A DNA stretch of 64,000 nt from Schizochytrium sp. TIO01 (GCA_004764695.1 SMSO01000033.1:2356001-2420000), one strand, 5' to 3'. Positions 16,440-35,980 are shown, counted from the first letter of the stretch. Translations and numbers: made by a program. Notes: generated by a model not told the origin, from the letters alone.

Positions 16440-17636
16440 TTACTTCTTCTTGGCAACAGCGTTGGCCTTGTTTGAGACCTTGACAAAACGGTAGTGAGCA
16501 ACAAACCACTCATTGCCAGCTCCATTGCCGTTATCGTACTTGAAGAGCTCAGAGCAGGCCATACAAAAGAGACGCCAGGCTTGATATTGTTCAGATGCCT
16601 TGTCGCCATAGCCTTCTTCGAAGAACTTGATCAAGTCTTTGCGGTTCTTGTCGAGGTTAACAAGCCAGTCCTCGAGGGTGCGAGAGTAGTGAACGCCGTT
16701 AATTGCCCAGCGGTTCTCAACACGAAGGTGGTCATTGATCATCAGAAAGAGGTCATACGAAGGCATGGTGCCACCGGAGAAGAAGTTCTCGCTCATCCAG
16801 CCATCCTGGAAGTGGTATGGCATATCCTTGTGGCAGAATACGTGGACCATGACTTTGCCCTCGTCCTTAAGCCAGAGCGAGATATTCTTAAAGAGCACCC
16901 AATAGTTTTTCACGTGCTCAAACATTTCAATGCTAAGAACACGGTCGAAGCTAGCCTCGGGGAGTTCCAGATCGTTGACATCGCAAGTCTTGATATCAAC
17001 GTTCTTGTAGCCGCGTTCCTTGGCACGCGCCATGATGAACTCGCGCTGAGAGTTGGAGTGCGAGACTCCGAGCACATTGAGCTTAGGGTAGTGCTTGCCA
17101 ATGTACAAACTAAGAGATCCCCAGCCACAGCCAAGGTCGAGGACCTTGGAGCCCGCAGGAAGCTTGTCAAGTTCAGCACGGTCGCAGAAGAGCTTCAAGG
17201 CATGGTCCTCAGACTCAGCGAGTGTGGTGTTCGCATCCGGGTATAGACAGCATGAGTACTTCATCTGCGGTCCCATCTTCTTAATGAAGAACTCTGCCGG
17301 GACCTCGTAGTGCTGCTCCGCAGACGCATCAGACTGCTCTGCGATTCCACGTGTCTTGAGGTCCTCCACGAAGGCGTGGATGTACTCAGCCTGCTTCTCG
17401 ACATCGCCGCCAAAAGTAACTGTGTTGATGGTGGACGCAAGGAGCTTGCGGATTCCGAAACGCACGATCTTGTCCGGCATGTAACCCTTTTCAATCGAAG
17501 GCAGGAGAATTGGCTGCAGCACATTATTCACAATTACATCCATCTTGGTCTGATTCTCAGCGCCTTGTTTACGCATCTTGTCTGCCTCACTCACAGGTGA
17601 GCCCGCGTTGTTGTTCTCCTGCTTGGACGCCGCCAT
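16440..17636 (-). CDS. SAM-dependent methyltransferase, CFA-synthase superfamily (coclaurine N-methyltransferase-like subfamily)
   Basis: PDKIVRFGIRKL, EQHYEVPAEFF..MGPQMKYSCC, VLDLGCGWGS, SHSNSQREFI, FDRVLSIEMFEHVKN, VHVFCH, WMSENFFSGGTMPS, HYSRTLEDW, WRLFCMACSELF. Confidence 0.93.
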   Translation of the reverse strand: MAASKQENNNAGSPVSEADKMRKQGAENQTKMDVIVNNVLQPILLPSIEKGYMPDKIVRFGIRKLLASTINTVTFGGDVEKQAEYIHAFVEDLKTRGIAEQSDASAEQHYEVPAEFFIKKMGPQMKYSCCLYPDANTTLAESEDHALKLFCDRAELDKLPAGSKVLDLGCGWGSLSLYIGKHYPKLNVLGVSHSNSQREFIMARAKERGYKNVDIKTCDVNDLELPEASFDRVLSIEMFEHVKNYWVLFKNISLWLKDEGKVMVHVFCHKDMPYHFQDGWMSENFFSGGTMPSYDLFLMINDHLRVENRWAINGVHYSRTLEDWLVNLDKNRKDLIKFFEEGYGDKASEQYQAWRLFCMACSELFKYDNGNGAGNEWFVAHYRFVKVSNKANAVAKKK

Positions 17637-17963
17637 CTTGCCTTGCCAAGAAGTTGATTAGTCTAAAGTTCACGCGTGTCGCGTCGAGTCAAGTTAAGCG
17701 AAGCGAAGCGGAAAGGAGGAGAAGCTTGCGTCTCTCACAACCTGCAGCTCACGTCCTGAGGGTGGCGGAGTTGTTCGCAAGCCTGAGGCGACCTCTGATT
17801 CGACAATTGCCAGCGAAGAAGACACGAATAGTGAATGTATGAATTGCTGAATGAATGACAATCAATCAATGAATTGCTAAAGGACTGAAGATCAGCGCTT
17901 GATTCCCAATAGCAGCTATAGCTACCTAAGGTATTAGGTAGGTACCCCTCCCTACCCAATGAA

Positions 17964-17965
<2 letters not shown>

Positions 17966-18005
<40 letters not shown>
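17966..18005. repeat. (TTTC)n microsatellite
   Basis: Direct reading. Confidence 0.95.
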
Positions 18006-18198
18006 GAGCCAGGAACTGCTTACAGACAAAGCATCGACCAAAGAAAGTTGGCTGCTTTTTCCAGCCCAGACGTGAACAAGCCGCGGAGGCCACGATAAGA
18101 TATCGATCGAGGCGCTCAGGTGAACCAGCTTGTTCGCGGCGCAAGGGCATAAACACCCAATCGCGATTCGCAATCGAACGAAGGCATGAAACTGATTT

Positions 18199-18200
<2 letters not shown>

Positions 18201-18232
<32 letters not shown>
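18201..18232. repeat. (TGAT)n microsatellite
   Basis: Direct reading. Confidence 0.95.
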
Positions 18233-18233
<1 letters not shown>

Positions 18234-21200
18234 CATTAATTAATTGCCCTTTCGAAGGATCTTCAGCGGAGAGAGTCAGCGACTCAGTCTGACAGACCTT
18301 CCGAGTCTCCCCTCTCCCTCATCGCCGGCGAGGACTGCACAACCCGAGCTTTCTCGAGCCGCTGCGGGGAGAGCAAGCCGCTGCGGGCGACTAAGGGAGG
18401 GGTGCTGCGGGGAGCTGCTATCCACAGTGGGAGCCGTGCGAATTCTTGCGCTTTCGTCACAGAACCGACGCCATCGCCATAATTTGGGGAATTATTATTA
18501 CACCTCAGGCGATGGATAGATAGATAGATATATCCATCCAGCGACATGACCTAAAGATAGCAAGCAAGAACTCAACTGCCACGTAAATAGCGGCGATCGA
18601 AAGAGAGAAAGAGAGAAAGAAAATGAGCGAAAAAGAAGAGATGACAGTTCGTTCAAACTGACAACATGTTGTTATTATTATGTTTTTTTTTTTTTTTTTT
18701 TTTTTTAAATTGGAAAAAGGAAGCAACGAACGAACGGCACATTCTTCCTTCAGACATTTATTCCATCATGCAAATAATTAATTTTGATAATTCAAAATTT
18801 ATATTAAAAAAAAAAAAAAGAAAAAAAAAAAAGAGCAAACAAAGCAAACCCGAAGAACCTTTCAATCAAAATCGCCAAAAGCCGCCGCTCCCTCTGTGGT
18901 CCTGGGCTGGGCCCTTCGCGCTTCGATGGGCTTCTCACGGGGTGCAGCTCCATCCCGCCTTCTTCTCCCTCTCCTTCGCTGCGCCGGGAGAGGAAGGAGG
19001 CCCGTGGCTGGTTTATTCTTCCCTTTCGTGCCGCTTCCTGAACGATTTGGTTTTGCATATACATACATACATATATATTATATATATATATATATATCAT
19101 ATAATTTGAAATTGAAATTGAATTCAAAAAAAGAAAAAACGAATTCAAATCGTTCGCAAATCGTTCAAATCTTCTCCAAACCCCTCCTCCTCCTCCTCCT
19201 CCTTCACAGTCAGACAGGAAACCAACGACGACAGGACATCCAGCAGAGGCGCCGTTCGCAAAGACGCTCCGGCGGTCGAGTCGAGCAGGGCGTCGGCCGC
19301 CGTGACTTCAGACTCTCCTTTCTCCTCCTGGGTCCCAGTTCTTCTTCTCCCTCGAATCCGCTTCGATCTTCACTCATTCGCTCATTCACCAAATCATTCG
19401 TTCATTGAGCCATTCATTGAGCCATTCATTGATTGCCATTCCGTCGCGCTGCAGTTAATTCTCCAACTGGAGCCTCGAGGATGCCGACGCGGCGACCTCC
19501 TCATCTGATGCTCCTGAGCCTCCGCAGATCGAGCTCGAGGCGCGAGGCCATTGGCTCCGCGGTGGACGTGCTGCAAGTGCTGAGCTCGATGTATGGATGT
19601 ATGTATGGATGTATGTATGGATGTATCTTCTTGGCCAGACGATACCATGACAATTCGGATGGAGCTTTCGCAAAACTCAGCCCGTTCTCGCCGCTGGCGA
19701 CGAGCGGGTTTGCGCTCCTGGGAAGGCGAAGACGAAGACGAGACTGCGGCTGATCGGCCAATCGGCCAATCGGCCAACGATCGATTCCTCGCTGATTGAT
19801 CGATCGATGTGCTGATGGATTGATTTATTGGGGTCACTGCCGATGGCTGTGTGTCTCCTCCACTTCCATTCATTCACCTCTTCAAGGCTGAGCGGACCCT
19901 GAAAGTAAGTAACACGAAAGGAGCGGTTCGGCGCCTCGTCGGCTTGGGAGGAAGAAGAACTCAACGAAACTCAGTCGTCGTACAAAGATCGTACCGCCGA
20001 GAGAGCGCTTTGCGGCGGAAGCGACAGCGACATTGGAACTGCGCGATCATGCCGAGGCCGCATTGGCTCACAGGGAAAGAAAGATGTCATCAGCACTTGC
20101 AGCAGGCAGTGCTGGCGTATCTTTTTTTTTTTTTCTTTTTTTTTCTTTGCTGCTGCTGCTGCTGTAAAACTACGACCAAGGCGTCGAAGGTTATTTTGCC
20201 ATGGGCCTCACAAGGAGACACGTGCGGAATTCCCAGATGGCTTTAATCTGAGTCAGGGGAGTAAGGTTTGTATAGTTGGCGTATCACAGGATGGTAAGAG
20301 AAGCTACCTCGTTATATTATATACATGTGTCTTCTTAGAAAGATGAGGCGAGGTTTATGGGGAAGCCTTGCGATCATTATGGTCAAACCTGCTTCTAAGT
20401 TGCGGAAGAATCAAACCTGCCCATCATATGTTTGAGGTTGTTTCTGTTCGTATCAGGTTTTTTATTGTTGGGTTTGCTCGCGTTATTCAATTTGATACTT
20501 TGGTACACGCGACGCATGCGACGAATCAAATTGACAGCACATGAATATCTGTATCTGCTCTTGACATGATGTCACGCGAATTTGCGAGGTCACATGTGAA
20601 TGCGGCAGGAAGGCATGCTAATCTTACCTCAGTGTTGCCTTGCGCCTTGTTTTCTTTCAAAGTTTTATAAAACTCTTCGCCGTCGAGGTAGCAACGAAGA
20701 GACTTCAAGTCCGATGGAGATTTTGAGATTCCCTCAGCACACTCCTGCCTATTTGCAGAATAAATATGTGCGTGAAATTGAAATTGATCCTCGTCTGTCC
20801 GAACACGGCACTGCTGCCTCACGAATGGACCAGTGCTGAGTCCGTGCTCGCCACACCCTCCAATTTGCTTACATCACCTGCGTCAATGTTGATGATCAGC
20901 GCACATTCACTGACCCATTAATTGGAAGGAAGCCTCTTCCACCATAGTCCTTTTCCAGACTTGAAAACTATCTCTAAGATCAGTATATGCGTGATGCTTT
21001 CCTTTCCGCACTGTCATATCGAGGTTCATACAAGTGAATAGCTTTCGCAAACAACAGAAATATTCGCCAGAGAAGTAAGTCCATATCTGTCTGAGTGATA
21101 CGGATTATGGGCACTGCCCACCAGCAATCATAAATAATCTCAGCGACGAGCGTCCTCACGCTTCTCGGTTCAGGACGGGCTTCTACGCGGTTTCCTACAG

Positions 21201-21371
21201 AGGGACGTTCGCGTTCGAGAGCCTTTTACGACTTCTGCGGAGACCGCCCGCAGTCTATGATCGATTGCGAAGCGCTTCACAATCGTGTTTCACAATCTAG
21301 CCCAATTCACGTGCTACCTATTTAGCTGCTCCAGAACAGCCCGAGGATCTGTTCGCAATTTGCAATTCTCT

Positions 21372-21454
21372 GCTGCAGATTGCAAAGCTGCAAATTGCAA
21401 AAGCTGCAAATTGCAAAAGCTGCAAATTGCAAAGCTGCAAATTGCAAAGCTGCA
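21372..21454. repeat. Tandem 15-16 bp minisatellite GCTGCAAATTGCAAA(A), 5 copies plus a partial copy
   Basis: gctgcagattgcaaa|gctgcaaattgcaaaa|gctgcaaattgcaaaa|gctgcaaattgcaaa|gctgcaaattgcaaa|gctgca. Confidence 0.9.
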
Positions 21455-21942
21455 TGGAGGTGAGTGGACCTATCGTAGGAGCAGGAGCTCCATAAGGCTC
21501 GCGCCGACTTACACGACATGAACGAGGGCAACGCTGAGGATGATGACGCTGTCTACAGTACCCGCTAAGCCCACTTCTACTTGCTGATCTCCTCTCCCTA
21601 CCAAAGCTGAGCTGAGCTGAGCTGAGCTGATCTATTATTTATTTATTTTTATTAAAGTTAATTCGTCTCTTGGTTTGCTCATCAGCGCTACCGCCGACTA
21701 ACAGGTACGTACAAGTATACTTATTCTGCGAGAACGATACGTGCATGATTTATCTATGTTCTAAAACTCGAAGTTATTGCTAAACTCTTGTCATTCCTGA
21801 TGGTAATGAAGCGATTTGTGGAGCAAGTGATTGCTACTTTCACTTCCTTCTTCTTCTAGTTAGTTTGTTTGCTTGTTTATCAGTTAGTTTGCTCAAAGTT
21901 TGGCTGTTTGTTTGTTCAATATTTGTTTGTTTGTTCAATATT

Positions 21943-21996
21943 TGTTTGAATGTTTGAATGTTTGAATGTTTGAATGTTTGAATGTTTGAATGTTTG
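21943..21996. repeat. (TGTTTGAA)n octamer tandem repeat
   Basis: Direct reading, about 6-7 copies. Confidence 0.9.
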
Positions 21997-22378
21997 ATTG
22001 ATTGTGTGCCAAAGAGAGAGAGAGAAGGAGCTGATGAGAAAGGTGGGTTGAGTCCTGCGCAGAGCCTGATCGCCTTCTTCCTCGCCTTGAACCTGAGGAG
22101 CGCACGCGCCCGAAAGCGCAGGAGATCGAGCCGCGGCGACGGAGGGCGTGAACAGGGAAGCCTCGCCCGCCCGCCCACCCGTCTGTCCACGCCTGCTCCG
22201 CGAAGACGGAGACAGGCTCTGCGGATGGTTGGAGCGTAAGGAGAGCGATCGCAATCCTCTCCAATCTCTCTCTCTCTAACGAACGAACGAACGAACGAAC
22301 AAATGAATGAACTCGAAGAAAGAAACGAACTCCTTTTACTCTTCTTTATTTGTCATTTGTCGTCTGTTCTTCACGCAA

Positions 22379-22441
22379 AATGAATGAATGAATGAATGAA
22401 TGAATGAATGAATGAATGAATGAATGAATGAATGAATGAAT
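22379..22441. repeat. (TGAA)n microsatellite, about 15 copies
   Basis: Direct reading. Confidence 0.97.
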
Positions 22442-23691
22442 TATCCCAAAGTGCTTATTGCGCCATAGTAATCGTACGATGGCTTCTTCTTCAAGTTTTC
22501 GCTATTAGTTATCACCTGAAATCCACACCAAACGAGCTCTTAACAATTTTCTTCCTGTCAAAGAGGGATACGTATAAGGACTGGCGCCATCCGTCCTTTG
22601 GCTTTCGCGATGGGATCGTTGCAGAGGAGGCCTCGAAAGGCATCGCAAGGCGCACGTTGTGATGGAGAGGAGCTCTGGAGGGGACGAAAGCGCGAGCGGA
22701 GGAGGCGCTTTGACCTCGACGAGAGCCTTCAACCATGCGGCAGCAGCAGAAGAAGGAGAAGGAGAAGGAGAAGGAGAAGTGAGGGGTGATTACTGTCGGA
22801 TACTCTTTTCTTTGTTTATCTTTTCTTTTTACACTGCATAATAATGAATGTGATTGAATTCTTCGTTTGTTATCCTTCTCAGAGCGCCAGGAGGTGGAAG
22901 ATACAGCCCCGCAGTCGTTGCCAGGAAAGGCAACCCCTCACGGGGGCTACATACCACAGCTGCAGTGGAGGAGGGAGAGGCGCTCAGAAGAATCTTCCAC
23001 AGTGACTGCGGTTAGCTGCAGGAGACGCCTCACAGCAGAATGGGGGAATCACGCGGCGCAGAGGAGACGCAGTGAGGGGGTCCATGCCTCTGTCTGTCTG
23101 TCTATCTCTATTGGGTTTCTTTCTTTTTTCTTGTTTTCTTTCTTGTTTTCTTTCTTGTTTTCTTTCTTTCTTTCTTTCCTCCTTTTGGAGTTTGTGATTG
23201 AAAAAGAAATGAAAGTCAGCAATCGATCAAATTCAACGATTGATTCGAATAGTCACTCTAACATAATCGATCGAGTGCTCGATCTTCAGGGCATCGTCAC
23301 CAAACTGCAATCAAAGAAAAGCTGAGGCGGCTGCTGCGACCGCGAGGAGGATCGCGACTTCTGTGCTCGACTGCAGGAACTGAGGGCGCAGCTGCTTATC
23401 CGCGAGCAGTGGGAAACTAACTGAGTCATCAGCGAGGCCTGCTGTAGCGTGACGAACGAAGCAGCCAACCAACTGACTCCAAGAACTACGCCGAAAACTG
23501 CAGTATCGACCACGACAGTGACATCGACAGCGACAGCAAAGATCTGCGGACGATCTACCAGACCCATATTCTGGCCAGACCTGCAGAGTCCATCGGTCGA
23601 CCGGTCTTTCAAGCTAGTTGAATATTTCACAAATTGATTGATTGCTTGGTGGAATTCCGCAAGAAGGAAAGGCCACCAGAATTCATTCAAA

Positions 23692-26600
23692 ATGCAGGAA
23701 AAGGCGCCCAAAGATGGCGCTCTTCACGTCGCTGTGATCGGCACGGGCATTGCTGGCCTGTCGACCGCTCTCGCATTGGCGCAGCAAGGATGTAAGGTCA
23801 GTGTCTTTGAGAAAGAAGATCGCCTTGGTGGCCACTCCTTCACCTACCCTGGCGAAGGCGACCGCCCCCCCGTGGATCTTGGATTCCAGGTCATGAACAA
23901 TACAACCTACCCGTATCTGACGACCCTGTTTGACTCCCTTGGCGTCATCACAGAACCCTCAGATATGTCGTTTGCCTTCAGCGTGGATGATGGACGTGTC
24001 GAGTGGAGCTCTGACGTTCTCTTCGCCCAGTCTCAAAATGCACGCGACCCAGGCTTTCTGTACATGATTCGCGAAATCTTTCGCTTTGCAGGCTCCACAG
24101 AAGTTCTCGACGAGACCAAGAGCGACGAGTTTGAGAGCATGACTCTTGGCGAGTACCTAGATATGCGTGGCTACAGCCAGCGATTCCGCTCGGACTACCT
24201 CTTGCCCACCACAGCCGCTATTTGGAGCGTCCCAAACCAAAAGATGGAGCAGTACCCGATTAAGCCTCTGGTGGCTTTCATGGCGAATCACCACCTGCTC
24301 TCACCTCTTGGAGAGCGTCCGCGCTGGCGCGTGGTCGCTGATCGCAGCAAAACCTATGTCGATGTGATCGCCAAAGAACTTGAGCAGCTTGGAGCGAGCA
24401 TTCGCCTCAACTCCCCCGTCAAATCTGTTCGCTATTCCACGACGGAGAACGCATCCAAATCAAAGTCCGTCAAGGTTACCTATACGAACGGATCTGCCGA
24501 GCAGAACACTTCCGAGGAGACTTTTGACCACGTTGTACTGGCAACCCACTCTGATCTTTCCACTGCCATGCTCGGCGAGGACAACGCCGAAGCTAAAGAC
24601 CGTGAACAAGTCTCGAAGATTCGATACCAGCCCAACCGCGTAATTTTGCATTCAGACGCTTCGCAAATGCCACGTGAACGCTCTGCTTGGGCTTCATGGA
24701 ACGTTCTCGATAAACGTGCCAATGTAGATGACGATCCATCCGCTCGCGATATTTGTGTCACCTACTGGCTCAATCATTTGCAAAACTTGCCAGAGTCTGC
24801 TCCCCTTCTCTTGTGCACCCTGAATCCCATAGCAGAGCCCGAGGCATCTAGTGTCATCTACGAAACTGTTCTAGACCACCCCATCTTTGATACAGATGCC
24901 ATGCAAGCTCAGCGCGAAATCAACAAGACACAAGCCAAGGACACGCCGGCGACTCGCTCCATCTGGTTTGCTGGAGCTTGGCTTGGATCCGGCTTCCATG
25001 AAGATGGAATTCGATCTGCGTTAGCAGTGTGTAAGTCTCTGACTGGAGACGTGCCTCTGTGGGCCCAGCAAGCTGGTGCTCCGGAACACCCCGGGTTAAA
25101 GATTATTCGTGGCCCTTCCCCGGACAAGACCATTATGCAGCGCTTTGGTCTTCAAATCTTTCAGTCGGTTGCCAAACGTGGTCTGCAGAAGGGTTACATG
25201 CAACTTATGCTCCCAGATGGCAATGATGCCACCTTTGGTCGGTCATCTTACGAGGATGCCAAGGCGCGTGGAGAACCTGCTGTCCGCATGCGCATTCTTG
25301 ACCTCGGCATGATGTTCAAGTGCATCGCCGAATCAGATATCGGTCTTGGTGAGGCCTACATTAACCGCATGTTTGATGTTGACGACCTTCCAGCACTTTT
25401 TGATCTTCTGATCGTCAACAACGAGACACTCCGTGAGACATTGAACCCGCTCGGCCTCTCTGCTAACTCAGGCCTCGCCTCTTTTGTGGGAGCAATCTCT
25501 TATTGCATAGGCAACGTGATTGAAAACATCCGCCACCTTGGTAATGATAACACGGTTACTGGCTCCCGTCGTAACATTGAGTCCCACTACGATGCTGGTA
25601 ATGACATGTACAAGCTATTTTTGGATAAGTCTCTAACGTACTCTTGTGGTCTTCACCGTCGTGAGTACGGTGCTGAGAATGCAAAACCAGGTGAAATCCT
25701 TGATTTGCACGAGGCTCAGCTGGCCAAACTTGATAGTATTATCAAGAAAGCACAGCTCAAGCCTAGCGACCATGTGCTTGAAATTGGTTGTGGCTGGGGA
25801 TCCTTTGCTATTCGTGCAGCTAGTACAGTTGGCTGTAAAGTAACCGGCATCACAATCTCAACGGAGCAGTTGGCCGAAGCCCGGGAGCGTGTTCGTGAAG
25901 CTGGTCTTGAGGACAAGGTCAACCTCATCATCTTTGATTACAGGAAAATGGGTATCCCCAAGCGTAGGGCTGGCAAAGGCGACGCTCTCGAGTATGAGCG
26001 CGACCTTGCCCCAGGCCACTTTGACAAAATTGTTTCAATTGAGATGCTCGAAGCAGTTGGACACGACCACCTCCCGGAGTACTTTGAAACCGTCGACCGT
26101 ATGCTCAAGCCCGGAGGTATTGCTGTAATTCAGGTCATCTCACTCAAGGACGAACGCTATGAAGAGTATCGCCGTACGTCTGATTTCATTCGTCGCTTCA
26201 TCTTCCCTGGAGGTCACCTTCCTTGTCATGCAGCGGTCAAGTGGGCTTCTGACCCTACAAGTCTCGTGATGGACCAGGTGGATGATATTGGTCCAGACTA
26301 TGCTGTGACCCTGCGGATGTGGCGAGAAAACTTCATTAAAAAGCATGATGAGATTCGCGCTCTCGGGTACCCAGAGACCTTTTTCCGCTGCTTCGATATG
26401 TACTTTGCATACTGCGAGGCTGGCTTCCAGCAGAATTATATTCATAACTACCACTTGGTGTTCAAAAAAGATGAAACTCTCAAAAAGCAAGAGCGCGATG
26501 AGAAGGAAAAGACTCAGCTCCAAGCGCTTTACAACCGCACGTTGGTACCTGCAGTCTTTTTTTCAATGAGCCTCATTGGTTGCCTTTCGTTGACTCTCAA

Positions 26601-28817
26601 CCCGACGATACGTCAGGTTGTCAGCATTTGCTGCAGTGCTGGGCTTTTCACCTCCATTTGCGCGTACTTTTTGCCTCAAATGGACCCGGCTATGGACACA
26701 TCTTCGCGTCGCGCGAATCATTACATTCGCTTGGTGTTTGTACGTTTCTTAATCTCAGCCGCAATGTGTGCCATCGTCCTTGGCTTGATCGCCTTTCATG
26801 AAGTTCTTTACACCACACGTGTGGCTCGCGCTGGCCTATGGACTACCTCATCTGGTTTGGGGGGCAGCAATAGCAATGTTGTCGCCAGCGAAGCCGATGA
26901 CTCCACATTCAACTTGTCGACGGATGCTCCGCAATCCATCTACTTTTGTGAATGGGGAAGTGACGAGACTCTTTGCCAGACCCAGGGAGGTACTAGTGCA
27001 TCGAGTATGATCTATGTACATAGCCCTATGCACTTTGTGGTGGGATGTCTTGCATTCGCATCTGTATCCCGCCTCTTGCTGGAACGTAACCTGATGAACA
27101 TGCTCCATGCACTCGCTCTCCTTGTGCTCAATGTGCTTTCTCATTCTTCGGACACCAAAACATCAACTACTGCTCTGGGCCTTGCCATTGTCCATGGTGC
27201 CAGTGAACTTCACGCTGCGATTAGCGCAGCTCGAACCTTGCTTAGTTTGAAGGGCTTTTCCTGGAGTGACAACCTTTACCACCACATGTGGACCATTGAC
27301 ATCTCCAGCCTTCTCATTATTCGTTGGATCCCCGTTCCTGTACTTCTCTCCCCTGTCATTCTTCGTTCGCCGTGGCCAGTTTTCATTTCAATCTGTCTCA
27401 TTGCGATTCGTGAATGCTCTGTTCTCCTTGACACGCTCCTTGCCTTAAAAGAAGACTACGAGAACCGTCTTAATGCCGAGGACCTGCTCAGCCAGGCCCG
27501 CAACCGTGGTGAGATTGTGAACAACATGGTCGGTTCTCACGAATCTCAGCAGACAACTGCTGCACGTACGTAAACAGAACAGAATTTGCGAGCGCTAGAG
27601 AAAAGTCGACATTTTACCTGAAGCATATACAAAGTGTCACTTTGCCTCTAGTAAATCGCTACAAATACATGCACAACTCTAACTAACATTGCTTTATGCG
27701 ATCTTTTTTCTTTTGTGAAATTTCACCGATCCTCGTCCCATGCCCCCCCCCTTCCCCCCGCCATTCTTTGGATCTTCCTTCTCCGTTTTCATCTTTAACT
27801 TCCTCAGATGGATCAGCAATTTATCACGGTACGGTGTATCACCAGCGCAACAAAGTTGAGGGTGCATCAAATGCGCGGCATGTGTTTAAGTACAATGTTT
27901 GGATGTCACTTGTTGATCTAGCAGAGGTCAAGCACGGCAAGGCTTTCCAAAATTCAATGTTTGTTAGCGCGAACAAGCCGAATTTTTTCTGCTGGTACCG
28001 TAAGGATCACTTCATTGGCCCTGCTGGGCCAGAACAGCCCCTCGATGAATGCATTCGTGACCTTGTTCTCGAGCAGACTGGCCGCAAACTGTCCACTGAA
28101 GGTAATGTTTTGCTTTTGACCAACATTCGCTGCTTTGGATTTGCATTTAACCCAGTGTCTGTCTTTTACTGCGTCGATCCCTCCCACACGCGTCTTGAAG
28201 CTGTCGTTCTTGAGGTTTCCAATACTCCATGGCTCCAAAAACGAATGTATGTAATTCCATTTGACCATGCCGATGAAGATGGTAAATGGCGCTCGAAGTG
28301 GCGGAAGGACTTTCATGTCAGTCCATTCTTTGACGTATTTTACAATTATGAGTGGTCCCTAGATATGCCAGGAGATACTATTTCTGTCCGTGCTGTGAGT
28401 ACGCGTCGCGATCCAGATACAGATGGTGCAGAAGAGGCCCCAGCACGTAAGGGTGAGCCATGGAACCAAAAGCTCGGGACTGCTCCTACACAGATACTAA
28501 GTGACGAAGAACGAAATCAACCAGATGGTCCTCGCACATTTATTGCCGGTGTTAATCTCAAACGCTCCTCTGCAGATGAGCAATGGCGCCAACTTCTAAC
28601 CCAGCCTCTTCTGACTATCTCAATCGTCTTGTACATTCATATCCACGCTGTGATCGTAACTTTCCGTAAAGGCTGTGAGCAAAAGCTCACTCCAGTTAAC
28701 GCCCCAGCTGTTGGTCTTGTGGATGCTCTGCGGCACTTATCTTTATTTGCTGTAGCAGGTGTAGCGGGCATCTGGAGCACAATTGTTTCACCTTTTACAG
28801 GCGTAAAGACTAAGTAA
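23692..28817 (+). CDS. Spliced multi-domain lipid-modifying enzyme, join(23692..27565,27808..28817), ~1627 aa: FAD-dependent oxidoreductase (COG2907/UfaD-like) + CFA-synthase-type methyltransferase (UfaM/plant CPS-like) + TLC-like membrane domain + DUF1365 (UfaO-like)
   Basis: FAD domain: VAVIGTGIAGL, FEKEDRLGGH, VDLGFQVMNNTTYP, SDMSF, WASWN, TYWLNHLQ, WFAGAWLGSGFHEDG. Methyltransferase: IGLGEAY, SRRNIESHYDAGNDMY..FLD..LTYSC, VLEIGCGWG, SIEMLEAVG, FIFPGG, YFAYCEAGF. A multi-TM segment follows. DUF1365: IYHGTVYHQR, LLTNIRCFGFAFNPVSVFYC, EVSNTPW, KDFHVSPFF. An in-frame GT-AG intron links the two ORFs. First ATG at 23692. Confidence 0.85.
27566..27807 (+). other. Predicted 242-nt phase-1 spliceosomal intron
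   Basis: Donor C|GTACGT at 27566, just before the exon-1-frame TAA. Branch-like CTAAC at 27683-27687. About 120 nt pyrimidine-rich with no AG until TTCCTCAG| at 27807. The junction codon C+AT=CAT keeps frame (...QQTTAA-H-GSAIYHG...). Confidence 0.8.
27808..28817 (+). CDS. DUF1365 (UfaO-like) domain exon; listed as the separate ORF 27696..28817 in the track
   Basis: Family motifs Y.G.V.H.R, F.Y...M..VDL, R.FGF.FNPVS..YC, EV.NTPW, K.FHVSPF. The first 37 aa of the listed ORF are translated polypyrimidine tract. Confidence 0.88.
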
Positions 28818-29343
28818 GCAGATATCTAGCTCTTTAAAGTCTTTCTCACTTCATCCTAAAAATTCATCTTGGAACTCAAGTAAACATAATATTAAAATTC
28901 TGTATATTGCTTACGTCTGATTTCACGACACTTGCTATGGCGCATCGGAAAAGCTAATCTGCATGTAATTGTTTGCCTCAGAAAGCTAGCAGCTCGGATG
29001 TTAGATTTTAAAGGAATATCGACACCGCAGACTCCAAGTTTTTTTGGTGCTTTTTAGAGGAATGTATATCTTTCCAACCTATTTTCTGCTTACTTATTTT
29101 CACTACTGTCTATTAGTTGAACTTCAAATTAAGAAAAAAATGGTTCCAGTTTTCCTGAATTGCGTTGTATGAAATTACCTCCAGTACAGAGATTTGGTGA
29201 TGATAAACCTACTTGTACCGGCGTGTTGACTATTTTGCACTTGTGTTTAACGTGAAATATCAATACCGAAACGTCTCAAACAAAATATTTATCAATTTCT
29301 TTTCGTAACAGTGATTTTCAAGACAACTTCCTGACTAGCGCAC

Positions 29344-30694: not shown

Positions 30695-31840
30695 ATGGTC
30701 AGCGCAGAGGCAGAACGCGAGAAGGAGCGTGGCAACAATTTGCTTAAGGATGGCAAGTTGGATGATGCCATTGATGCGTACAGCAAGGCCATTGAAATTG
30801 ATGGCTCAAACCACATCTACTACTCCAACCGATCCCACGCATATGCCAAGACAGAAAATTTCCCAAGCGCTTTGGCTGATGCCAACCGCTGTGTGGAATT
30901 GAAACCGGACTGGGCAAAGGGATACAACCGTCTGTCCGCAGCGTTTAGGGGTCTTGGAGACCAAGCGAAGGCAGATGATGCTATGAAAAAGTTTCGAGAC
31001 CTTGGCGGTGCCCCGGTTGCTGCATCTGGCACCTCCTCATCGGGGGGCTCTGCGGCGTCTGCTCAGCTTCCGGATGTTTTGTCTAAAATGCAACTTGGTC
31101 TCCGCGTGTTCCTTGTGCTTAATTTCATGCTCTACGCGTTTCCTTTGACTTCATCTTCGGGCGCTTTCCAGCGAACCCTCTTCGCTGCGTTTGGAACATA
31201 CCTGATTCACATTTACCGTGTTCACGGCAAACCCGAACGAACACGCGAGTACGCGCAGCGCTTGGCGTTGGACTACCGCTCGCACTACGCGATGTCGGCA
31301 CTCTTGTTTGCTTTTGCTGGCTCCCCTCGTATGATCGTACTCCTTCCGCACCTGCTTAGTGAGATTGGCTACGTCGCCGATTACATTTTGACAGCGCAGC
31401 CCCAGATTGCCGCTAAGATCTCCCCTACAATGAACTCGATGGTCCTCCCTAAGTTTACGCAGACCACTCCGGATCAGTGGGCACAGATGGACCTGCGTAC
31501 TAAGTGGCAGCGCTACAACCAGGTCTCTATGCAGTACTCTTCTGGCTTAGAAGTTGCCATTGGTATTTCTCTCATTTTTGAGATGCTTCTGCCCACGCGT
31601 AACTTTTTGGCTCTCTTCGCATACTGGCACTTCTTGCGCGTGCGTTACATGTGCTCGGAAAATGTAAAGCTTGTATTTCGCAACTTTGACACACAAATTA
31701 TGAGCTACGCTTCTCGCAACGCCACTGCTATGAACCTTTACCAGAAGGTCCGTGATTTTGCCAGTGCCATGGTACAGCCCAACCAACAGCCGCAGGGGGG
31801 CGGCATGTCTGGTCTTATGTCCCGTTGCACGATCTCCTAA
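30695..31840 (+). CDS. TPR (STI1/Hop TPR1-like) + TMEM33/Pom33-family membrane protein ending in a CaaX-like motif
   Basis: EKERGN..LK.G..DDAIDAYSKAI..D..NHIYYSNRS.AY...ALADA..C..LKPDWAKGY.R (3 TPRs). TM region with EVAIGISLIF and YWHFLRVRY..S, typical of TMEM33/Pom33. Ends -CTIS. Confidence 0.82.
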   Translation: MVSAEAEREKERGNNLLKDGKLDDAIDAYSKAIEIDGSNHIYYSNRSHAYAKTENFPSALADANRCVELKPDWAKGYNRLSAAFRGLGDQAKADDAMKKFRDLGGAPVAASGTSSSGGSAASAQLPDVLSKMQLGLRVFLVLNFMLYAFPLTSSSGAFQRTLFAAFGTYLIHIYRVHGKPERTREYAQRLALDYRSHYAMSALLFAFAGSPRMIVLLPHLLSEIGYVADYILTAQPQIAAKISPTMNSMVLPKFTQTTPDQWAQMDLRTKWQRYNQVSMQYSSGLEVAIGISLIFEMLLPTRNFLALFAYWHFLRVRYMCSENVKLVFRNFDTQIMSYASRNATAMNLYQKVRDFASAMVQPNQQPQGGGMSGLMSRCTIS

Positions 31841-33727: not shown

Positions 33728-35980
33728 ATGGGCGGAGGTGTTAGCAAATGGCTGTCGGATCATGATCGCAAGATCGAAGCTTTGCGCATGACTCCGTTTT
33801 TTGTACTCTTTGATGATGATCAGCTAGAGAACATTGCAAAATACTTCAAGTTTGAAACGATCTCTGAAGGAGGGTTGCTTGGTAATCAGGCGATGGTAGT
33901 CGTTCTCGAGGGAGAACTTGCGGTATCAACTCTAGTACCAGTTCAGGGAGGGGGGAGCACCTCCAAGGGTCATGTATCGGAGTTGCTTTGTGTGAAGAAG
34001 AAGGGCGATTTCTTCAGTCGACCATCCCGTGAACTTGTACATGGACGGGGATCATTTAATGAAAAGCACTCTAAAAATGGAGGATCCATATTTAAAGTAG
34101 TGGAGGCGTTTGACTTTACCACCATTCGGGCTATCCATACAACTCGCATTCTCAAGCTTGACTCCCATTCCATGGAATCGTATCTTCGAAGCCCTGGTGC
34201 TGCAAGTGCTGGTCTCCTGCAAACTGTGTTGTCAACTGATATTCGACAACTCCTTAAGACGGTACCCTTCCTTCGGCCTCTCAAACCTGGGAAACTCACT
34301 TCACTTTCAGAGATGTTTGTGTTTAAAGCTTTTGAAGCAGGCACTGAAGTTTTACGGGAAGGTGATGAGGATGACAACTTCTACCTCGTCCTAGCAGGAG
34401 AACTCGAGGTCACAGCCAAGGTGCATCCACATGATCCAAATGCAAAGGGTTCAGTAACTCACGCAATTGAAGAAGCAGAGGAGTCGCGACATGTTGCGAA
34501 CGCGAGCCCCATTGATTCGCTAAAGAGAGCATCCTTAGTCAGCCAGAATCGCCAGAGCACGGCAAGTACTTCGAGCACAGCGGACAGAGAACCTGCTCCT
34601 GGGAGTGGCGATGTTACATCAGAGCAGTTTCGCAATGGTAGAGCAAGCTCGGTGGCTAGCGAAAGTGGAGGAGCTAAAGCTGCACAAAAACCTGAGGAGG
34701 AGGAGGAAGATGCAGCAATGGACAAGTCGAAGGATAGTGTTGGATCGAATTCAAGCGAAAATGCAATGCAGTTTGACCTCGGACGTAAGATCGGGGTTAC
34801 TGCGTCTCCCAATGGACCTCTTCGCACGGCACCCGAAACACCGACAACACGTAGCAATAAGGTACCTGTCATCAAACCAGCGCCATCCATGAGGCTCCTG
34901 CGCAAAAGTTCAAGCTTGGTGGTCCCTGATGCGGATCGTGTGATGTTAGGCACGATTGGCCCTGGTTCTTATTTTGGAGAAATGGCAATCATGGCACAGA
35001 TGCCTCGTACTGCAACAGTAAAGAGTACTTCAAAATGCCTCCTTGCTCGCATTCATGGGCGTGACTTCCACAACGTTTTGAAACTTTCAAAGCACGTGTT
35101 GGACGCTTTTGACCTACATGCAAAGGAACGCATGGTGACAAAGCTATACGCCTTTAAGCTCCCTTTCTTTGCCGGTATCTCCAAGAGTAAGCTACTCACA
35201 CTAGCCAAGCTTTGTGAGTTGAACCAGTTTCAAGAAAATGACGTTATCATTCAAGAGAATACACGCTCCGGCAAGTTTCACATTCTTATCAATGGAATGG
35301 TTAGCGTCTCAAAGAATTCGGAGGCCTTTGTGCGCCTATCTGAGGGCTCTTACTTTGGCGAAATTAGTCTTCTCACGGACAAGCCCCATCTAGCGACTGT
35401 AACTGCTTGCGCAAAATGCGTTGTGCTAAGCGTTGACAAAAAGGGATTTGATACATTCTTTGCCGACTCTCCTACACTTTCCGCAGAATTTGCCATGCGT
35501 TTGCTCGGCGCCCATGCCATCGATCTCAAGCACCTCATTCGCCATCCCCTTGGTTTTGAGCTTTTCGAACAGCACATGGAGAAGGAATTCACAAAGGAAC
35601 ATCTCGACTTTTACTTTGCCGTAGAGAAGTTTCGACAAGGAGCCCCGGATGCTCTGAGCTCCGCAGATATCAAGCGAAAGTACATTGGATCAGAGTCAGA
35701 GACTCAAGTTAACATTTCTGCTGGTATGGCCCAAGAGGTTCTTGATCTACCCGAAAGCCCCGACATGTTCGACATTGCACAGGAGGAGGTGTACAAGCTT
35801 ATGAAACGTGATAACTTCGAACGCTTTAAGAAGACACCATTCTTTGATGAACTCATTAACGCTATCCAATGCTATAAAGATGTGAAAGACATTCCGACTG
35901 ACGATGCTGATTGCACACGCGCAGAGATTTTAGCGATCCGTGATCCTGATAATGAGGAACCTGAAGCAGAAACTGCATAA
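33728..35980 (+). CDS. Cyclic-nucleotide-binding (3 CNB) + RGS domain protein, predicted N-myristoylated
   Basis: MGGGVS N-terminus. CNB motifs LREGDEDDNFYLVLAGELEV, GSYFGEMAIMAQMPRTATV, GSYFGEISLL..KPHLATV. RGS: FEQHMEKEFTKEHLDFY..VEKF, KYIGSESETQVNIS, FDIAQEEVYKLMKRDNFERFKKT. Confidence 0.9.
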   Translation: MGGGVSKWLSDHDRKIEALRMTPFFVLFDDDQLENIAKYFKFETISEGGLLGNQAMVVVLEGELAVSTLVPVQGGGSTSKGHVSELLCVKKKGDFFSRPSRELVHGRGSFNEKHSKNGGSIFKVVEAFDFTTIRAIHTTRILKLDSHSMESYLRSPGAASAGLLQTVLSTDIRQLLKTVPFLRPLKPGKLTSLSEMFVFKAFEAGTEVLREGDEDDNFYLVLAGELEVTAKVHPHDPNAKGSVTHAIEEAEESRHVANASPIDSLKRASLVSQNRQSTASTSSTADREPAPGSGDVTSEQFRNGRASSVASESGGAKAAQKPEEEEEDAAMDKSKDSVGSNSSENAMQFDLGRKIGVTASPNGPLRTAPETPTTRSNKVPVIKPAPSMRLLRKSSSLVVPDADRVMLGTIGPGSYFGEMAIMAQMPRTATVKSTSKCLLARIHGRDFHNVLKLSKHVLDAFDLHAKERMVTKLYAFKLPFFAGISKSKLLTLAKLCELNQFQENDVIIQENTRSGKFHILINGMVSVSKNSEAFVRLSEGSYFGEISLLTDKPHLATVTACAKCVVLSVDKKGFDTFFADSPTLSAEFAMRLLGAHAIDLKHLIRHPLGFELFEQHMEKEFTKEHLDFYFAVEKFRQGAPDALSSADIKRKYIGSESETQVNISAGMAQEVLDLPESPDMFDIAQEEVYKLMKRDNFERFKKTPFFDELINAIQCYKDVKDIPTDDADCTRAEILAIRDPDNEEPEAETA

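What the first reader, a model, noticed from the sequence alone, without database searches (positions are those of the whole stretch)
23692..28817. Candidate one-polypeptide furan-fatty-acid synthase: FAD oxidoreductase + methyltransferase + TLC-like + DUF1365 fused through a hidden intron
Seen: two ORFs that the track lists separately are joined in frame by a GT-AG intron (27566-27807), giving a ~1627-aa four-domain protein. Established (from recall): in Rhodobacter/Cereibacter sphaeroides, methyl-furan fatty acids are made on phospholipid by UfaM (CFA-family methylase), UfaD (FAD/NAD-binding desaturase) and UfaO (DUF1365-family, O2-dependent ring formation). These families co-occur in many bacterial operons. 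Plant cyclopropane synthases fuse only the FAD and methylase parts. Inference: this protist packs all three catalytic activities plus a membrane anchor into one enzyme. It may make radical-scavenging furan lipids that protect a PUFA-rich membrane. The eukaryotic route to furan fatty acids is poorly defined genetically, so this would be a notable system.
Basis: partly seen in the sequence, partly recalled or inferred. Interest (0 to 1): 0.93.

Follow-up and report, generated by a model that had tools for sequence, protein, structure and literature searches.

The report
Fused furan-fatty-acid-type lipid enzyme gene
A thraustochytrid protist (Aurantiochytrium-like) expresses one spliced gene that joins, in a single membrane protein, relatives of all three bacterial enzymes known to build furan fatty acids; the fusion is real, but its product has not been tested.

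Summary
RNA-derived contigs from three studies show exactly the predicted GT..AG splice (27565|27808, 242 nt). A DNA run does not show it. A public transcriptome ORF of 1627 aa equals exon 1 + one residue + exon 2.

The protein has four parts:
- a UfaD-like FAD oxidoreductase;
- a CMAS-family methylase;
- a multi-pass membrane region that is remotely TLC-like (profile and fold evidence, no direct Pfam hit);
- DUF1365, the UfaO family, and the only copy found in this genome.

In 80 bacterial DUF1365 loci the same three families are almost always adjacent, in the order FAD>DUF1365>CMAS. This gene's methylase belongs to that cluster-linked clade, not with E. coli Cfa. The next gene upstream is a CNMT/LIME/FufM-like methylase.

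The furan-fatty-acid reading is the best supported, but it is unproven:
- plant relatives make cyclopropane acids;
- no furan lipid is reported from thraustochytrids;
- A. limacinum SR21 reportedly lacks vaccenate, the bacterial substrate.

The homology idea was already published for Arabidopsis in 2024. The four-part protein already sits, mislabelled, in public databases. The new points are the fusion with DUF1365 and its meaning. This scan had already noted the neighbouring methylase (s1-851768) and the intron (s1-851794) on this same stretch of DNA.

The parts
23467..28904 (+). Approximate transcript span (5' and 3' ends not mapped precisely)
   Evidence: In run X5 the contigs cover 23467-27565 and 27808-28904. 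The X1 and X7 3' contigs end at 28902 and 28885 (table 8).
23692..27565 (+). Exon 1 coding part (aa 1-1291 plus the first base of codon 1292)
   Evidence: Continuous ORF. Single RNA contigs cover it without a gap. It matches P0132 residues 1-1291 at 1289/1291.
23692..25101 (+). UfaD-like FAD oxidoreductase domain (aa ~1-470; GxGxxG at aa 15-20)
   Evidence: Pfam Amino_oxidase E 7e-22 and NAD_binding_8 E 2e-15. It is 39% identical end to end (E 3e-102) to the FAD oxidoreductase encoded just upstream of DUF1365 and beside sigma-E/ChrR in Phyllobacterium.
25156..26499 (+). CFA-synthase-family methylase (aa ~489-936: N-terminal CFAS domain plus SAM-dependent catalytic domain)
   Evidence: Pfam CMAS E 2e-73. 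NCBIfam CFA synthase models align aa 489-936 but score below their cut-offs. PDB CFA synthases match at E 2e-43. Gln replaces E. coli Cfa His266. It lies in the clade of DUF1365-linked CMAS genes.
26539..27456 (+). Multi-pass membrane region, remotely TLC-like (aa ~950-1255)
   Evidence: Hydropathy shows 6-7 segments. There is no Pfam hit. hhalign gives 88% probability, E 2.8e-6, to the tails of algal homologues, inside their Pfam TLC matches. The AF2 model has pLDDT 77. The best three of 48,161 chains are ceramide synthases, Z 10.5/9.8/9.8.
27566..27807 (+). Intron, 242 nt, GT..AG, phase 1. If retained, the reading frame stops at 27571-27573 and gives a 1293-aa protein without DUF1365
   Evidence: Sequence. 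The joint is seen in 3 runs and is absent from the DNA run. Intron-retaining unitigs are also present (X5 depth 64 against 190 spliced; X7 29 against 66; X1 30 against 24). MMETSP holds both forms, P0131 (1293 aa) and P0132 (1627 aa).
27808..28817 (+). Exon 2 coding part (last two bases of codon 1292, aa 1293-1627, stop at 28815-28817)
   Evidence: 335/335 identity to P0132 residues 1293-1627.
27819..28673 (+). DUF1365 (UfaO family) domain
   Evidence: Pfam PF07103 E 5e-51, profile positions 1-226 of 235. It is the only DUF1365 match in the 64-Mb genome. All family-invariant residues are kept. The AF2 model has pLDDT 94.9 and shows a closed beta-barrel.
28611..28799 (+). Two C-terminal hydrophobic helices after the barrel (exon-2 aa ~268-330)
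   Evidence: AF2 helices 268-286 and 303-330. Hydropathy peaks at P0132 residues 1559-1577 and 1602-1620. The first helix is conserved in the family; the second is absent from the ~255-aa bacterial members.
16440..17636 (-). Neighbouring gene: 398-aa CNMT/LIME/FufM-like methyltransferase, head to head with the fusion gene across a ~6-kb ORF-poor spacer
   Evidence: Pfam CMAS E 2e-42. Best PDB match is coclaurine N-methyltransferase 6gkv, E 7e-65. It forms a clade (SH-aLRT 100) with 8 bacterial methylase paralogues that lie within 8 kb of DUF1365 clusters. No credible ORF lies between 17.6 and 23.6 kb.

Best explanation
This is one two-exon, expressed gene of an Aurantiochytrium-like thraustochytrid. 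It encodes a 1627-aa membrane enzyme. The parts, in order, are a UfaD-like FAD oxidoreductase, a UfaM-position CMAS methylase, a TLC-fold membrane domain, and a DUF1365 (UfaO family) beta-barrel with a hydrophobic tail. All of that is shown.

The rest is inferred. It is the eukaryotic, fused equivalent of the bacterial ufaD-ufaO-ufaM module. It probably works on an unsaturated acyl chain of a membrane or lipid-droplet lipid in three steps: SAM-dependent methylation of a double bond, FAD-dependent desaturation to a conjugated methyl-diene, and O2-dependent ring closure to a methyl-furan fatty acid. The TLC-like domain would anchor the enzyme and perhaps hold the chain. The neighbouring FufM/LIME-like methylase is a candidate for a second methylation. 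Intron retention yields a short form without the ring-closing domain.
For: Gene structure:
- Splice joint in three runs, absent from the DNA run.
- Public ORF P0132 equals exon 1 + exon 2.
- The same architecture occurs in Aplanochytrium (P0006/P0121, 1586 aa) and Hondaea (P0002).

Domains:
- Pfam and NCBIfam matches.

Module logic in 80 bacterial DUF1365 loci:
- A UfaD-like gene is present in 77 and CMAS in 68. Among loci with full flanks the counts are 47/47 and 43/47.
- The order FAD>DUF1365>CMAS is seen in 48 loci, plus 10 with a second CMAS.
- Pairwise bacterial fusions exist (L013, L072, L076).
- The Phyllobacterium locus sits next to sigma-E/ChrR, the singlet-oxygen regulon. Its link to the R. 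sphaeroides ufa operon is partly from recall.
- In R. palustris the adjacent RPA2571-2569 are UfaD, UfaO and UfaM, and they suffice for 9M5-FuFA (PMC7380195).

Placement of this gene's domains:
- The FAD domain is 39% identical to the Phyllobacterium cluster protein.
- The CMAS domain lies in the Gln-type cluster-linked clade, apart from E. coli Cfa (SH-aLRT 91).
- DUF1365 keeps all invariant residues and is single-copy in the genome.

Other links:
- The upstream neighbour is FufM/LIME-like.
- Arabidopsis homologues co-localise on lipid droplets.
- The Chlamydomonas homologues CFA1, CFA2/CPLD27 and DUF1365 are co-induced by singlet oxygen.
Against: - No furan fatty acid, and no product of this gene, is reported for thraustochytrids in the searchable literature.
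- A. limacinum SR21 is reported to lack 16:1n-7 and 18:1n-7, the bacterial UfaM substrate class.
- Plant FAD-CMAS proteins (Sterculia, cotton) make cyclopropane acids. This is from recall and is cited in PMC4067076.
- Four of the five bicarbonate ligands of cyclopropane synthases are kept.
- In R. sphaeroides the cluster-encoded CMAS (RSP1089) was dispensable; UfaM is encoded elsewhere.
- The characterised UfaM, UfaD, UfaO and FufM sequences could not be fetched. Orthology rests on synteny proxies.
- The eukaryotic pathway is still only a hypothesis.
Confidence: 0.55

Rival explanations
1. The enzyme is a plant-CPS-like cyclopropane (or mid-chain methyl/methylene) fatty-acid synthase. The CMAS domain makes a cyclopropane or methyl-branched chain. 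The FAD and DUF1365 domains modify that chain in another way (for example a cyclopropene or another oxygenated product) or are accessory. No furan ring is formed.
For: - The FAD+CMAS architecture is shared with plant CPS and with algal proteins named 'cyclopropane fatty acid synthase'.
- Cys139, Glu239, Ile268 and Tyr317 of E. coli Cfa are conserved.
- The best PDB matches are cyclopropane synthases.
- The vaccenate substrate is reported absent in A. limacinum SR21.
- RSP1089, the cluster-encoded CMAS of R. sphaeroides, is not needed for FuFA.
Against: - His266 is replaced by Gln in this protein, in all 120 FAD-fused homologues and in 43/44 DUF1365-adjacent bacterial CMAS.
- E. coli Cfa lies outside that clade.
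- The only known activity of a DUF1365 protein is furan ring formation.
- Covalent fusion to DUF1365 argues that the three domains serve one pathway.
- No cyclopropane acids are reported from Aurantiochytrium.
Confidence: 0.25
2. The enzyme acts on a lipid other than a glycerolipid acyl chain, such as a sphingoid base (as the Hondaea record's name 'Sphingolipid C9-methyltransferase' implies), a sterol or an isoprenoid. The TLC-like domain would reflect sphingolipid chemistry.
For: - The Hondaea homologue is named 'Sphingolipid C9-methyltransferase'.
- The membrane domain resembles ceramide synthases in fold.
- The FAD domain has weak similarity to HpnE and phytoene desaturases.
Against: - That name is an automatic annotation.
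- The CMAS domain clusters with bacterial DUF1365-linked fatty-acyl methylases.
- The genome holds a separate 466-aa CMAS protein with an N-terminal membrane segment (L084). It is a better candidate for a C9-methyltransferase; this was not tested.
- The HpnE and CrtI matches cover little beyond the Rossmann fold and score far below their cut-offs.
Confidence: 0.1
3. The fusion is an artefact. The two ORFs would be separate genes, and the joint would be a rare read-through or mis-assembly.
For: - Intron-retaining molecules are common (X1 depth 30 against 24 spliced).
- An ATG at 27696 inside the intron opens a 373-aa ORF.
- The run types are only guessed.
Against: - The exact GT..AG joint is seen in three studies and not in the DNA run.
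- An independent MMETSP assembly gives the 1627-aa ORF.
- Aplanochytrium has a 1586-aa ORF with the same order of parts.
- Exon 2 begins at position 1 of the DUF1365 profile with no start codon of its own in the exon.
Confidence: 0.02

Closest known systems
Bacterial furan fatty acid module UfaD-UfaO-UfaM (Rhodopseudomonas palustris RPA2571-2569; Cereibacter sphaeroides RSP1091, RSP1090, RSP2144; PMC7380195)
   Same: The same three protein families are involved: COG2907-type FAD oxidoreductase, DUF1365 and CMAS methylase. The bacterial genes are adjacent in nearly all of 80 loci sampled. The FAD domain is 39% identical to a cluster protein and the CMAS domain 35%. A FufM-like methylase lies nearby here and in 8 bacterial loci.
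   Different: Here the parts form one polypeptide in the order FAD-CMAS-membrane-DUF1365, whereas the bacterial gene order is FAD-DUF1365-CMAS. A TLC-fold membrane domain and an extra C-terminal helix are added. The host is a eukaryote and the gene has an intron. The substrate is probably not vaccenate. Activity is untested. The characterised sequences themselves were not compared.
Arabidopsis UFAM1/UFAD1 (AT3G23510), UFAO1 (AT1G30130) and LIME1 (AT4G33110), proposed lipid-droplet FuFA enzymes (PMC10940516, PMC13247531)
   Same: There is a eukaryotic FAD+CMAS fusion, a DUF1365 protein and a CNMT-like methylase. The homology argument to the Ufa proteins is the same. Function is hypothetical there as well.
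   Different: In plants DUF1365 is a separate gene and the FAD-CMAS protein has no TLC-like tail. Here all parts are joined and the LIME-like gene is the chromosomal neighbour.
Green-algal, haptophyte and cryptophyte FAD-CMAS-TLC proteins (e.g. Chlamydomonas CFA1 class; P0010, P0035, P0053, P0064)
   Same: They are 42-45% identical over FAD+CMAS. They carry the same Gln signature. Their membrane tail is homologous. The short, intron-retaining isoform has exactly this architecture.
   Different: The algal proteins end after the TLC domain. Their DUF1365 is a separate, co-regulated gene.
Plant cyclopropane fatty acid synthases (Sterculia foetida, cotton CPS)
   Same: An N-terminal FAD oxidase-like domain is fused to a CMAS domain that acts on lipid-bound acyl chains.
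   Different: Their assayed product is dihydrosterculic (cyclopropane) acid (from recall). They have no TLC-like domain and no DUF1365. They were not retrieved here, so their residue at the His266 position was not checked.

Membership tests
UfaO / DUF1365 (PF07103) | Match to the family profile over its full length, above the curated cut-off | tested here: met
   174 bits against a cut-off of 25, profile positions 1-226 of 235. The genome-wide search gives a single copy, 173 bits.
UfaO / DUF1365 (PF07103) | Family-invariant residues retained | tested here: met
   Y147, K166, S171, P172 and F173 are invariant, and 28 near-invariant columns were found, in a 79-sequence alignment numbered on this protein. 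G7, H11, R13, F26, D36 and L37 were also read directly in the exon-2 sequence.
UfaO / DUF1365 (PF07103) | O2-dependent conversion of a methyl-diene acyl chain to a furan | not testable with these tools
   This needs an assay. Only RSP1090 and RPA2570 have been assayed.
UfaO / DUF1365 (PF07103) | Groups with the characterised UfaO sequences in a tree | not tested
   No tool could fetch Q3IYV8 or RPA2570 by accession. The 80 loci include six Bradyrhizobium but no Rhodopseudomonas or Cereibacter.
UfaD (FAD-dependent acyl desaturase, Amino_oxidase/COG2907 type) | N-terminal FAD Rossmann motif and end-to-end similarity to the oxidoreductase encoded beside DUF1365 | tested here: met
   GTGIAG at aa 15-20. 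39% identity over 451 columns, E 3e-102, to the Phyllobacterium protein, and 32% to the Legionella protein.
UfaD (FAD-dependent acyl desaturase, Amino_oxidase/COG2907 type) | Desaturation of 11Me-12t-18:1 to the 10t,12t-diene | not testable with these tools
   Biochemical assay required.
UfaM-type methylase (CMAS, PF02353) | CMAS profile match and SAM-binding motif | tested here: met
   247 bits. The motif VLEIGCGWG is present.
UfaM-type methylase (CMAS, PF02353) | Belongs to the clade of CMAS genes encoded next to DUF1365 (the position of R. palustris UfaM) | tested here: met
   The tree places it with 17 cluster-linked bacterial CMAS. E. coli Cfa lies outside (SH-aLRT 91). The FAD-fused clade has support 99. 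It shares Gln at the Cfa His266 position. UfaM itself is not in the tree.
UfaM-type methylase (CMAS, PF02353) | Product is a methyl-alkene rather than a cyclopropane | not testable with these tools
   The sequence does not decide this: 4 of 5 bicarbonate ligands are kept and His is replaced by Gln.
TLC domain (TRAM/LAG1/CLN8, PF03798) | Pfam profile match | tested here: not met
   No PF03798 hit at E<=10 on aa 937-1291.
TLC domain (TRAM/LAG1/CLN8, PF03798) | Remote homology to TLC-bearing relatives, and a TLC fold | tested here: inconclusive
   hhalign gives 88% probability over 96 columns, inside the Pfam TLC matches of the algal homologues. In the fold search the three best of 48,161 chains are ceramide synthases, Z 10.5-9.8, with 179-188 residues aligned. 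That is below the tool's caution line of about 13 for helical bundles. Foldseek E-values are not significant. The Lag1 catalytic motif was not examined.
Cyclopropane fatty acid synthase (E. coli Cfa / plant CPS type) | All five bicarbonate-site residues (Cys139, Glu239, His266, Ile268, Tyr317; list from recall) | tested here: not met
   Cys, Glu, Ile and Tyr are present, but His266 is Gln. NCBIfam CFA-synthase equivalog scores of 228 and 222 are below the cut-offs of 600 and 400. Whether Gln abolishes cyclopropanation is unknown.

The most novel reading that the evidence does not exclude
A single 1627-aa membrane enzyme of a non-photosynthetic, DHA-rich protist carries out the whole route from an unsaturated acyl chain to a methyl-furan fatty acid. 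It would do so on a substrate other than vaccenate, with the chain held in its own TLC-fold domain. Regulated intron retention would switch between a ring-closing long form and an algal-type short form that stops at the methyl or diene stage. That would give the first genetically defined eukaryotic furan-lipid synthase, as a one-gene tool.
Probability: 0.3. Interest if true: 0.8.

Novelty: new variant of a known kind. Interest (0 to 1): 0.58.

Why it matters
Furan fatty acids are radical scavengers found in algae, plants and fish. Their eukaryotic synthesis has no proven gene. A natural fusion of all three bacterial-type activities is Rosetta-stone evidence that the eukaryotic FAD-CMAS and DUF1365 proteins work in one pathway. 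That idea is so far only proposed for Arabidopsis and Chlamydomonas.

Thraustochytrids are transformable and are used industrially for DHA oil. One knockout, or one cDNA expressed in yeast or in a ufa-mutant bacterium, could therefore test the pathway. It could also provide a single-gene route to these lipids.

The work also corrects public annotation ('Sphingolipid C9-methyltransferase', 'Amine oxidase domain-containing protein'). It further shows a sequence signature (Gln at the E. coli Cfa His266 position) that separates DUF1365-linked methylases from E. coli Cfa and from the FufM/LIME-like clade.

Tried and rejected
- **Direct TLC detection.** Pfam on the membrane tail found nothing.
- **DUF1365 fold.** Foldseek against the PDB gave no significant match for the DUF1365 model. 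VIA-align gave only middling hits to calycin-like barrels: OlmO spirocyclase Z 7.0, nitrobindin 6.2, Rv2717c 6.1, phycobilin lyase CpeS 5.8. These are below the Z 8 trust line, so the fold is described only as a closed beta-barrel.
- **Membrane-domain fold by Foldseek.** Not significant.
- **The look-up of encoding contigs.** I could not show that P0003/P0291 and P0005/P0139 are adjacent on their shared contigs, nor name the organisms of P0159, P0174 and P0237.
- **The search for related loci.** The call with the 79-sequence alignment failed for lack of a conserved stretch. A 5-sequence alignment worked.
- **Characterised sequences.** UfaM, UfaD, UfaO and FufM could not be fetched by accession. 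They did not appear among the 80 loci or the plasmid hits.
- **Land-plant CPS.** These did not appear in the top 120 hits, so their residue at the His266 position is unknown.
- **Literature.** Searches for furan or cyclopropane acids in thraustochytrids found nothing relevant.
- **Artefact reading.** Considered and rejected; see the rival explanations.
- **Tuberculostearate-type BfaA/BfaB pair.** Considered and set aside. From recall, its flavoprotein is a FAD_binding_4 type, not the Amino_oxidase type found here.
- **Joining the exons.** Exons were searched separately by reference. Full-length numbering comes from the public ORF P0132.

Full report
**1. Observation**

The + strand holds an ORF 23638-27573 (first ATG at 23692) and an ORF 27696-28817. 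The sequence at 27566 reads GTACGTAA and the sequence ending at 27807 reads ...CCTCAG. Removing 27566-27807 (242 nt) joins c(27565) to at(27808-9). That gives a His codon, and the frame continues as GSAIYHGTVYHQR.

Read laying on 23300-29200 shows one joint only, 27565|27808, 'skips 242, GT..AG'. It appears in X1, X5 and X7, which are three studies with three organism labels. X19 shows no joint; there a single 19.7-kb contig covers the whole stretch, as DNA would.

In X5 the contigs run 23467-27565 and 27808-28904 without another gap. The gene therefore has two exons, and the transcript spans roughly 23.47-28.90 kb. The run types are the tool's guesses, and X7 is flagged 'probably DNA'. The joint, and the contig breaks at the exon ends, are nonetheless what RNA gives.

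Independent support comes from the 90% cluster of the exon-1 protein. It holds a public MMETSP ORF of 1627 aa (P0132) and one of 1293 aa (P0131). P0132 equals exon 1 at 1289/1291 residues and exon 2 at 335/335, with one residue between them.

**2. Organism**

The best named relative is Hondaea fermentalgiana, at 72% identity. Aplanochytrium stocchinoi has a 1586-aa homologue.

The near-identity to MMETSP0958 transcripts points to Aurantiochytrium, probably A. limacinum. That assignment of MMETSP0958 is from my recall. The header's taxon number 87120 now resolves to a fungus, whereas A. limacinum is 87102.

**3. Parts**

Pfam and NCBIfam give three domains:
- an FAD Rossmann/Amino_oxidase domain at aa 12-290, extending to about aa 470 by alignment;
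- a CFA-synthase-like region at aa 489-936 (CMAS E 2e-73; the equivalog models score below their cut-offs);
- DUF1365 on exon 2 (E 5e-51).

The stretch aa 950-1255 has 6-7 hydrophobic segments and no Pfam hit. Three results bear on its nature:
- A profile of the labyrinthulomycete tails aligns with a profile of 59 algal, haptophyte and cryptophyte tails at 88% probability (E 2.8e-6, 96 columns). The aligned stretch lies inside the Pfam TLC matches of those proteins.
- An AF2 model of the region (pLDDT 77), compared with 48,161 chains, has yeast Lac1, yeast ceramide synthase and human CerS6 as its three best matches (Z 10.5, 9.8, 9.8). TMEM120A and ELOVL7 follow.
- That Z is below the tool's caution line for helical bundles, and Foldseek is not significant.

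I therefore call the region TLC-like on two concordant but individually modest lines.

The DUF1365 model is very confident (pLDDT 94.9). It shows a closed beta-barrel (aa 1-255) followed by two long helices. No solved structure matches it clearly. The best, sub-threshold, resemblances are to calycin-like ligand barrels.

**4. Relatives and architecture**

FAD-CMAS proteins with a TLC tail are common in green algae, haptophytes and cryptophytes. In the exon-1 homologue search, only labyrinthulomycete proteins add DUF1365 after that tail: P0002, P0006/P0121, P0007/P0127 and P0132.

A whole-library search with exon 2 found 3361 DUF1365 proteins. Among the best 150 are three other fusions, FAD-CMAS-DUF1365 or CMAS-DUF1365, without the membrane spacer: P0174, P0159 and P0237. 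Their organisms are unknown. The three catalytic parts have therefore been joined more than once, or in more than one layout.

DUF1365 is single-copy in this genome.

**5. Link to the Ufa pathway**

Lemke et al. (PMC7380195) showed three steps:
- UfaM methylates vaccenate on phospholipid;
- UfaD desaturates the product to a methyl-diene;
- UfaO, a DUF1365 protein, uses O2 to form 9M5-FuFA.

The adjacent R. palustris genes RPA2571-2569 suffice for the whole route.

I could not fetch those sequences, so I used synteny proxies. Annotated plasmid loci show FAD oxidoreductase > DUF1365 > CFA-synthase-family, plus DUF2878, DUF1295, DUF2177 and photolyase, in Legionella. In Phyllobacterium they show sigma factor/ChrR divergent from FAD oxidoreductase > DUF1365.

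Across 80 named bacterial loci (scripts 71, 72, 74):
- a UfaD-like ORF is present in 77 and a CMAS ORF in 68 (47/47 and 43/47 where both flanks are complete);
- the same-strand order is F-D-M in 48, F-D-M-M in 10 and F-D in 10;
- three loci have pairwise fusions.

The window's FAD domain is 39% identical end to end to the Phyllobacterium protein. Its CMAS is 35% identical to the Legionella one.

At the position of E. coli Cfa His266, a bicarbonate ligand (ligand list from recall; alignment):
- this protein has Gln;
- all 120 FAD-fused homologues have Gln;
- 43 of 44 DUF1365-adjacent bacterial CMAS have Gln.

In a quick IQ-TREE tree, E. coli Cfa lies outside a clade (SH-aLRT 91) that holds all these Gln-type sequences. 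The FAD-fused proteins form a clade (99) whose sister is the CMAS of a bacterial DUF1365-CMAS fusion (L076).

**6. The neighbour**

The ORF at 16440-17636 (-) is a 398-aa CMAS-family protein. Its best solved relative is coclaurine N-methyltransferase (E 7e-65). That is the class of Arabidopsis LIME1, which Omata et al. relate to FufM, and of Chlamydomonas CFA2/CPLD27.

In the trees it groups (SH-aLRT 100) with eight bacterial His-type paralogues that lie within 8 kb of DUF1365 clusters. No credible ORF lies between it and the fusion gene; the spacer is low-complexity sequence.

This agrees with the earlier scan note s1-851768. The 6-kb spacer is not a compact shared promoter, and conservation of the pairing in other thraustochytrids was not checked.

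**7. What argues against furan lipids**

- No paper in the library reports furan or cyclopropane acids from thraustochytrids.
- A. limacinum SR21 is stated to lack 16:1n-7 and 18:1n-7. If this is that species, the substrate must differ from the bacterial one.
- Plant FAD-CMAS enzymes make cyclopropane acids (recall).
- In R. sphaeroides the cluster CMAS RSP1089 is dispensable.
- The eukaryotic pathway remains a hypothesis in 2021-2026 papers.

**8. Isoforms**

If the intron is retained, the frame ends after two more codons (…A-R-T-stop, 27571-27573). That gives a 1293-aa FAD-CMAS-TLC protein with the algal architecture.

Retained unitigs are sizeable beside the spliced ones (k-mer depths 64 against 190, 29 against 66, and 30 against 24). 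MMETSP assembled both forms. This may be unspliced precursor or a real short isoform; contig depths cannot decide. It matches scan note s1-851794.

**9. Verdict**

- The gene model and the four-part protein are confirmed (about 0.97).
- I put about 0.85 on it being the fused eukaryotic counterpart of the bacterial ufaD/ufaO/ufaM module.
- I put about 0.5 on its end product being a furan fatty acid.

The homology idea is published for plants, and the protein is already, mislabelled, in databases. The DUF1365 fusion, the cluster-linked Gln signature and the FufM-like neighbour are new observations. I class it as a new variant of a known kind, of moderate to good interest.

Noticed in passing
window 16440-17636 (-): A 398-aa CMAS-family methyltransferase of the coclaurine-N-methyltransferase/LIME/FufM-like class is the next gene upstream, head to head with the fusion gene. 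It groups with bacterial paralogues found near DUF1365 clusters.
   Followed up: partly
window 27566-27807: Intron-retaining molecules are abundant beside spliced ones in all three RNA-like runs, and MMETSP holds both ORFs. Retention gives a 1293-aa protein that ends two residues into the intron and lacks DUF1365.
   Followed up: partly
window 17640-23460: About 6 kb has no credible ORF. It is rich in simple repeats and low-complexity runs (poly-K/E-like and poly-F-like translations, short tandem motifs).
   Followed up: no
L013:6825-8765, L072:2106-4424, L076:7992-10031: Bacterial single ORFs carry two of the three domains: FAD+DUF1365 (647 aa) and DUF1365+CMAS (773 and 680 aa). The L076 CMAS is sister to the eukaryotic FAD-fused clade. 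The open frames were not checked for internal start codons.
   Followed up: partly
L042, L046, L050, L062, L075, L076, L077, L079 (flanks of the DUF1365 match): Eight of the bacterial loci carry a second, His-type CMAS paralogue of the CNMT/FufM-like clade within 8 kb of the FAD-DUF1365-CMAS cluster.
   Followed up: partly
L084:1058-2458 (+) = G000:C33:3027057-3028457: A third strong CMAS gene of this genome is a 466-aa ORF with a hydrophobic N-terminus. It is Gln-type but sits on a very long branch. It is possibly the real sphingolipid C9-methyltransferase type.
   Followed up: no
P0159, P0174, P0237 (public proteins, organisms unknown): These are FAD-CMAS-DUF1365 or CMAS-DUF1365 fusions with only a ~40-aa linker and no TLC-like spacer. 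Their FAD-CMAS parts are 39-44% identical to green-algal proteins.
   Followed up: partly
window 30695-31840 (+) and 33728-35980 (+): Two downstream genes were seen: a TPR + TMEM33/POM33 protein, and a protein with three cNMP-binding domains plus an RGS domain.
   Followed up: no
P0132 header (MMETSP0958): The source header gives TAXON_ID=87120, which is now a fungus (Rhizopogon burlinghamii). Aurantiochytrium limacinum is 87102. This looks like a digit transposition in the source.
   Followed up: yes
P0002 (Hondaea fermentalgiana, 1526 aa): The public gene model is named 'Sphingolipid C9-methyltransferase'. It holds only profile positions 109-226 of DUF1365, and its CMAS match is split into two stretches. 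The model probably mis-splices this gene.
   Followed up: no
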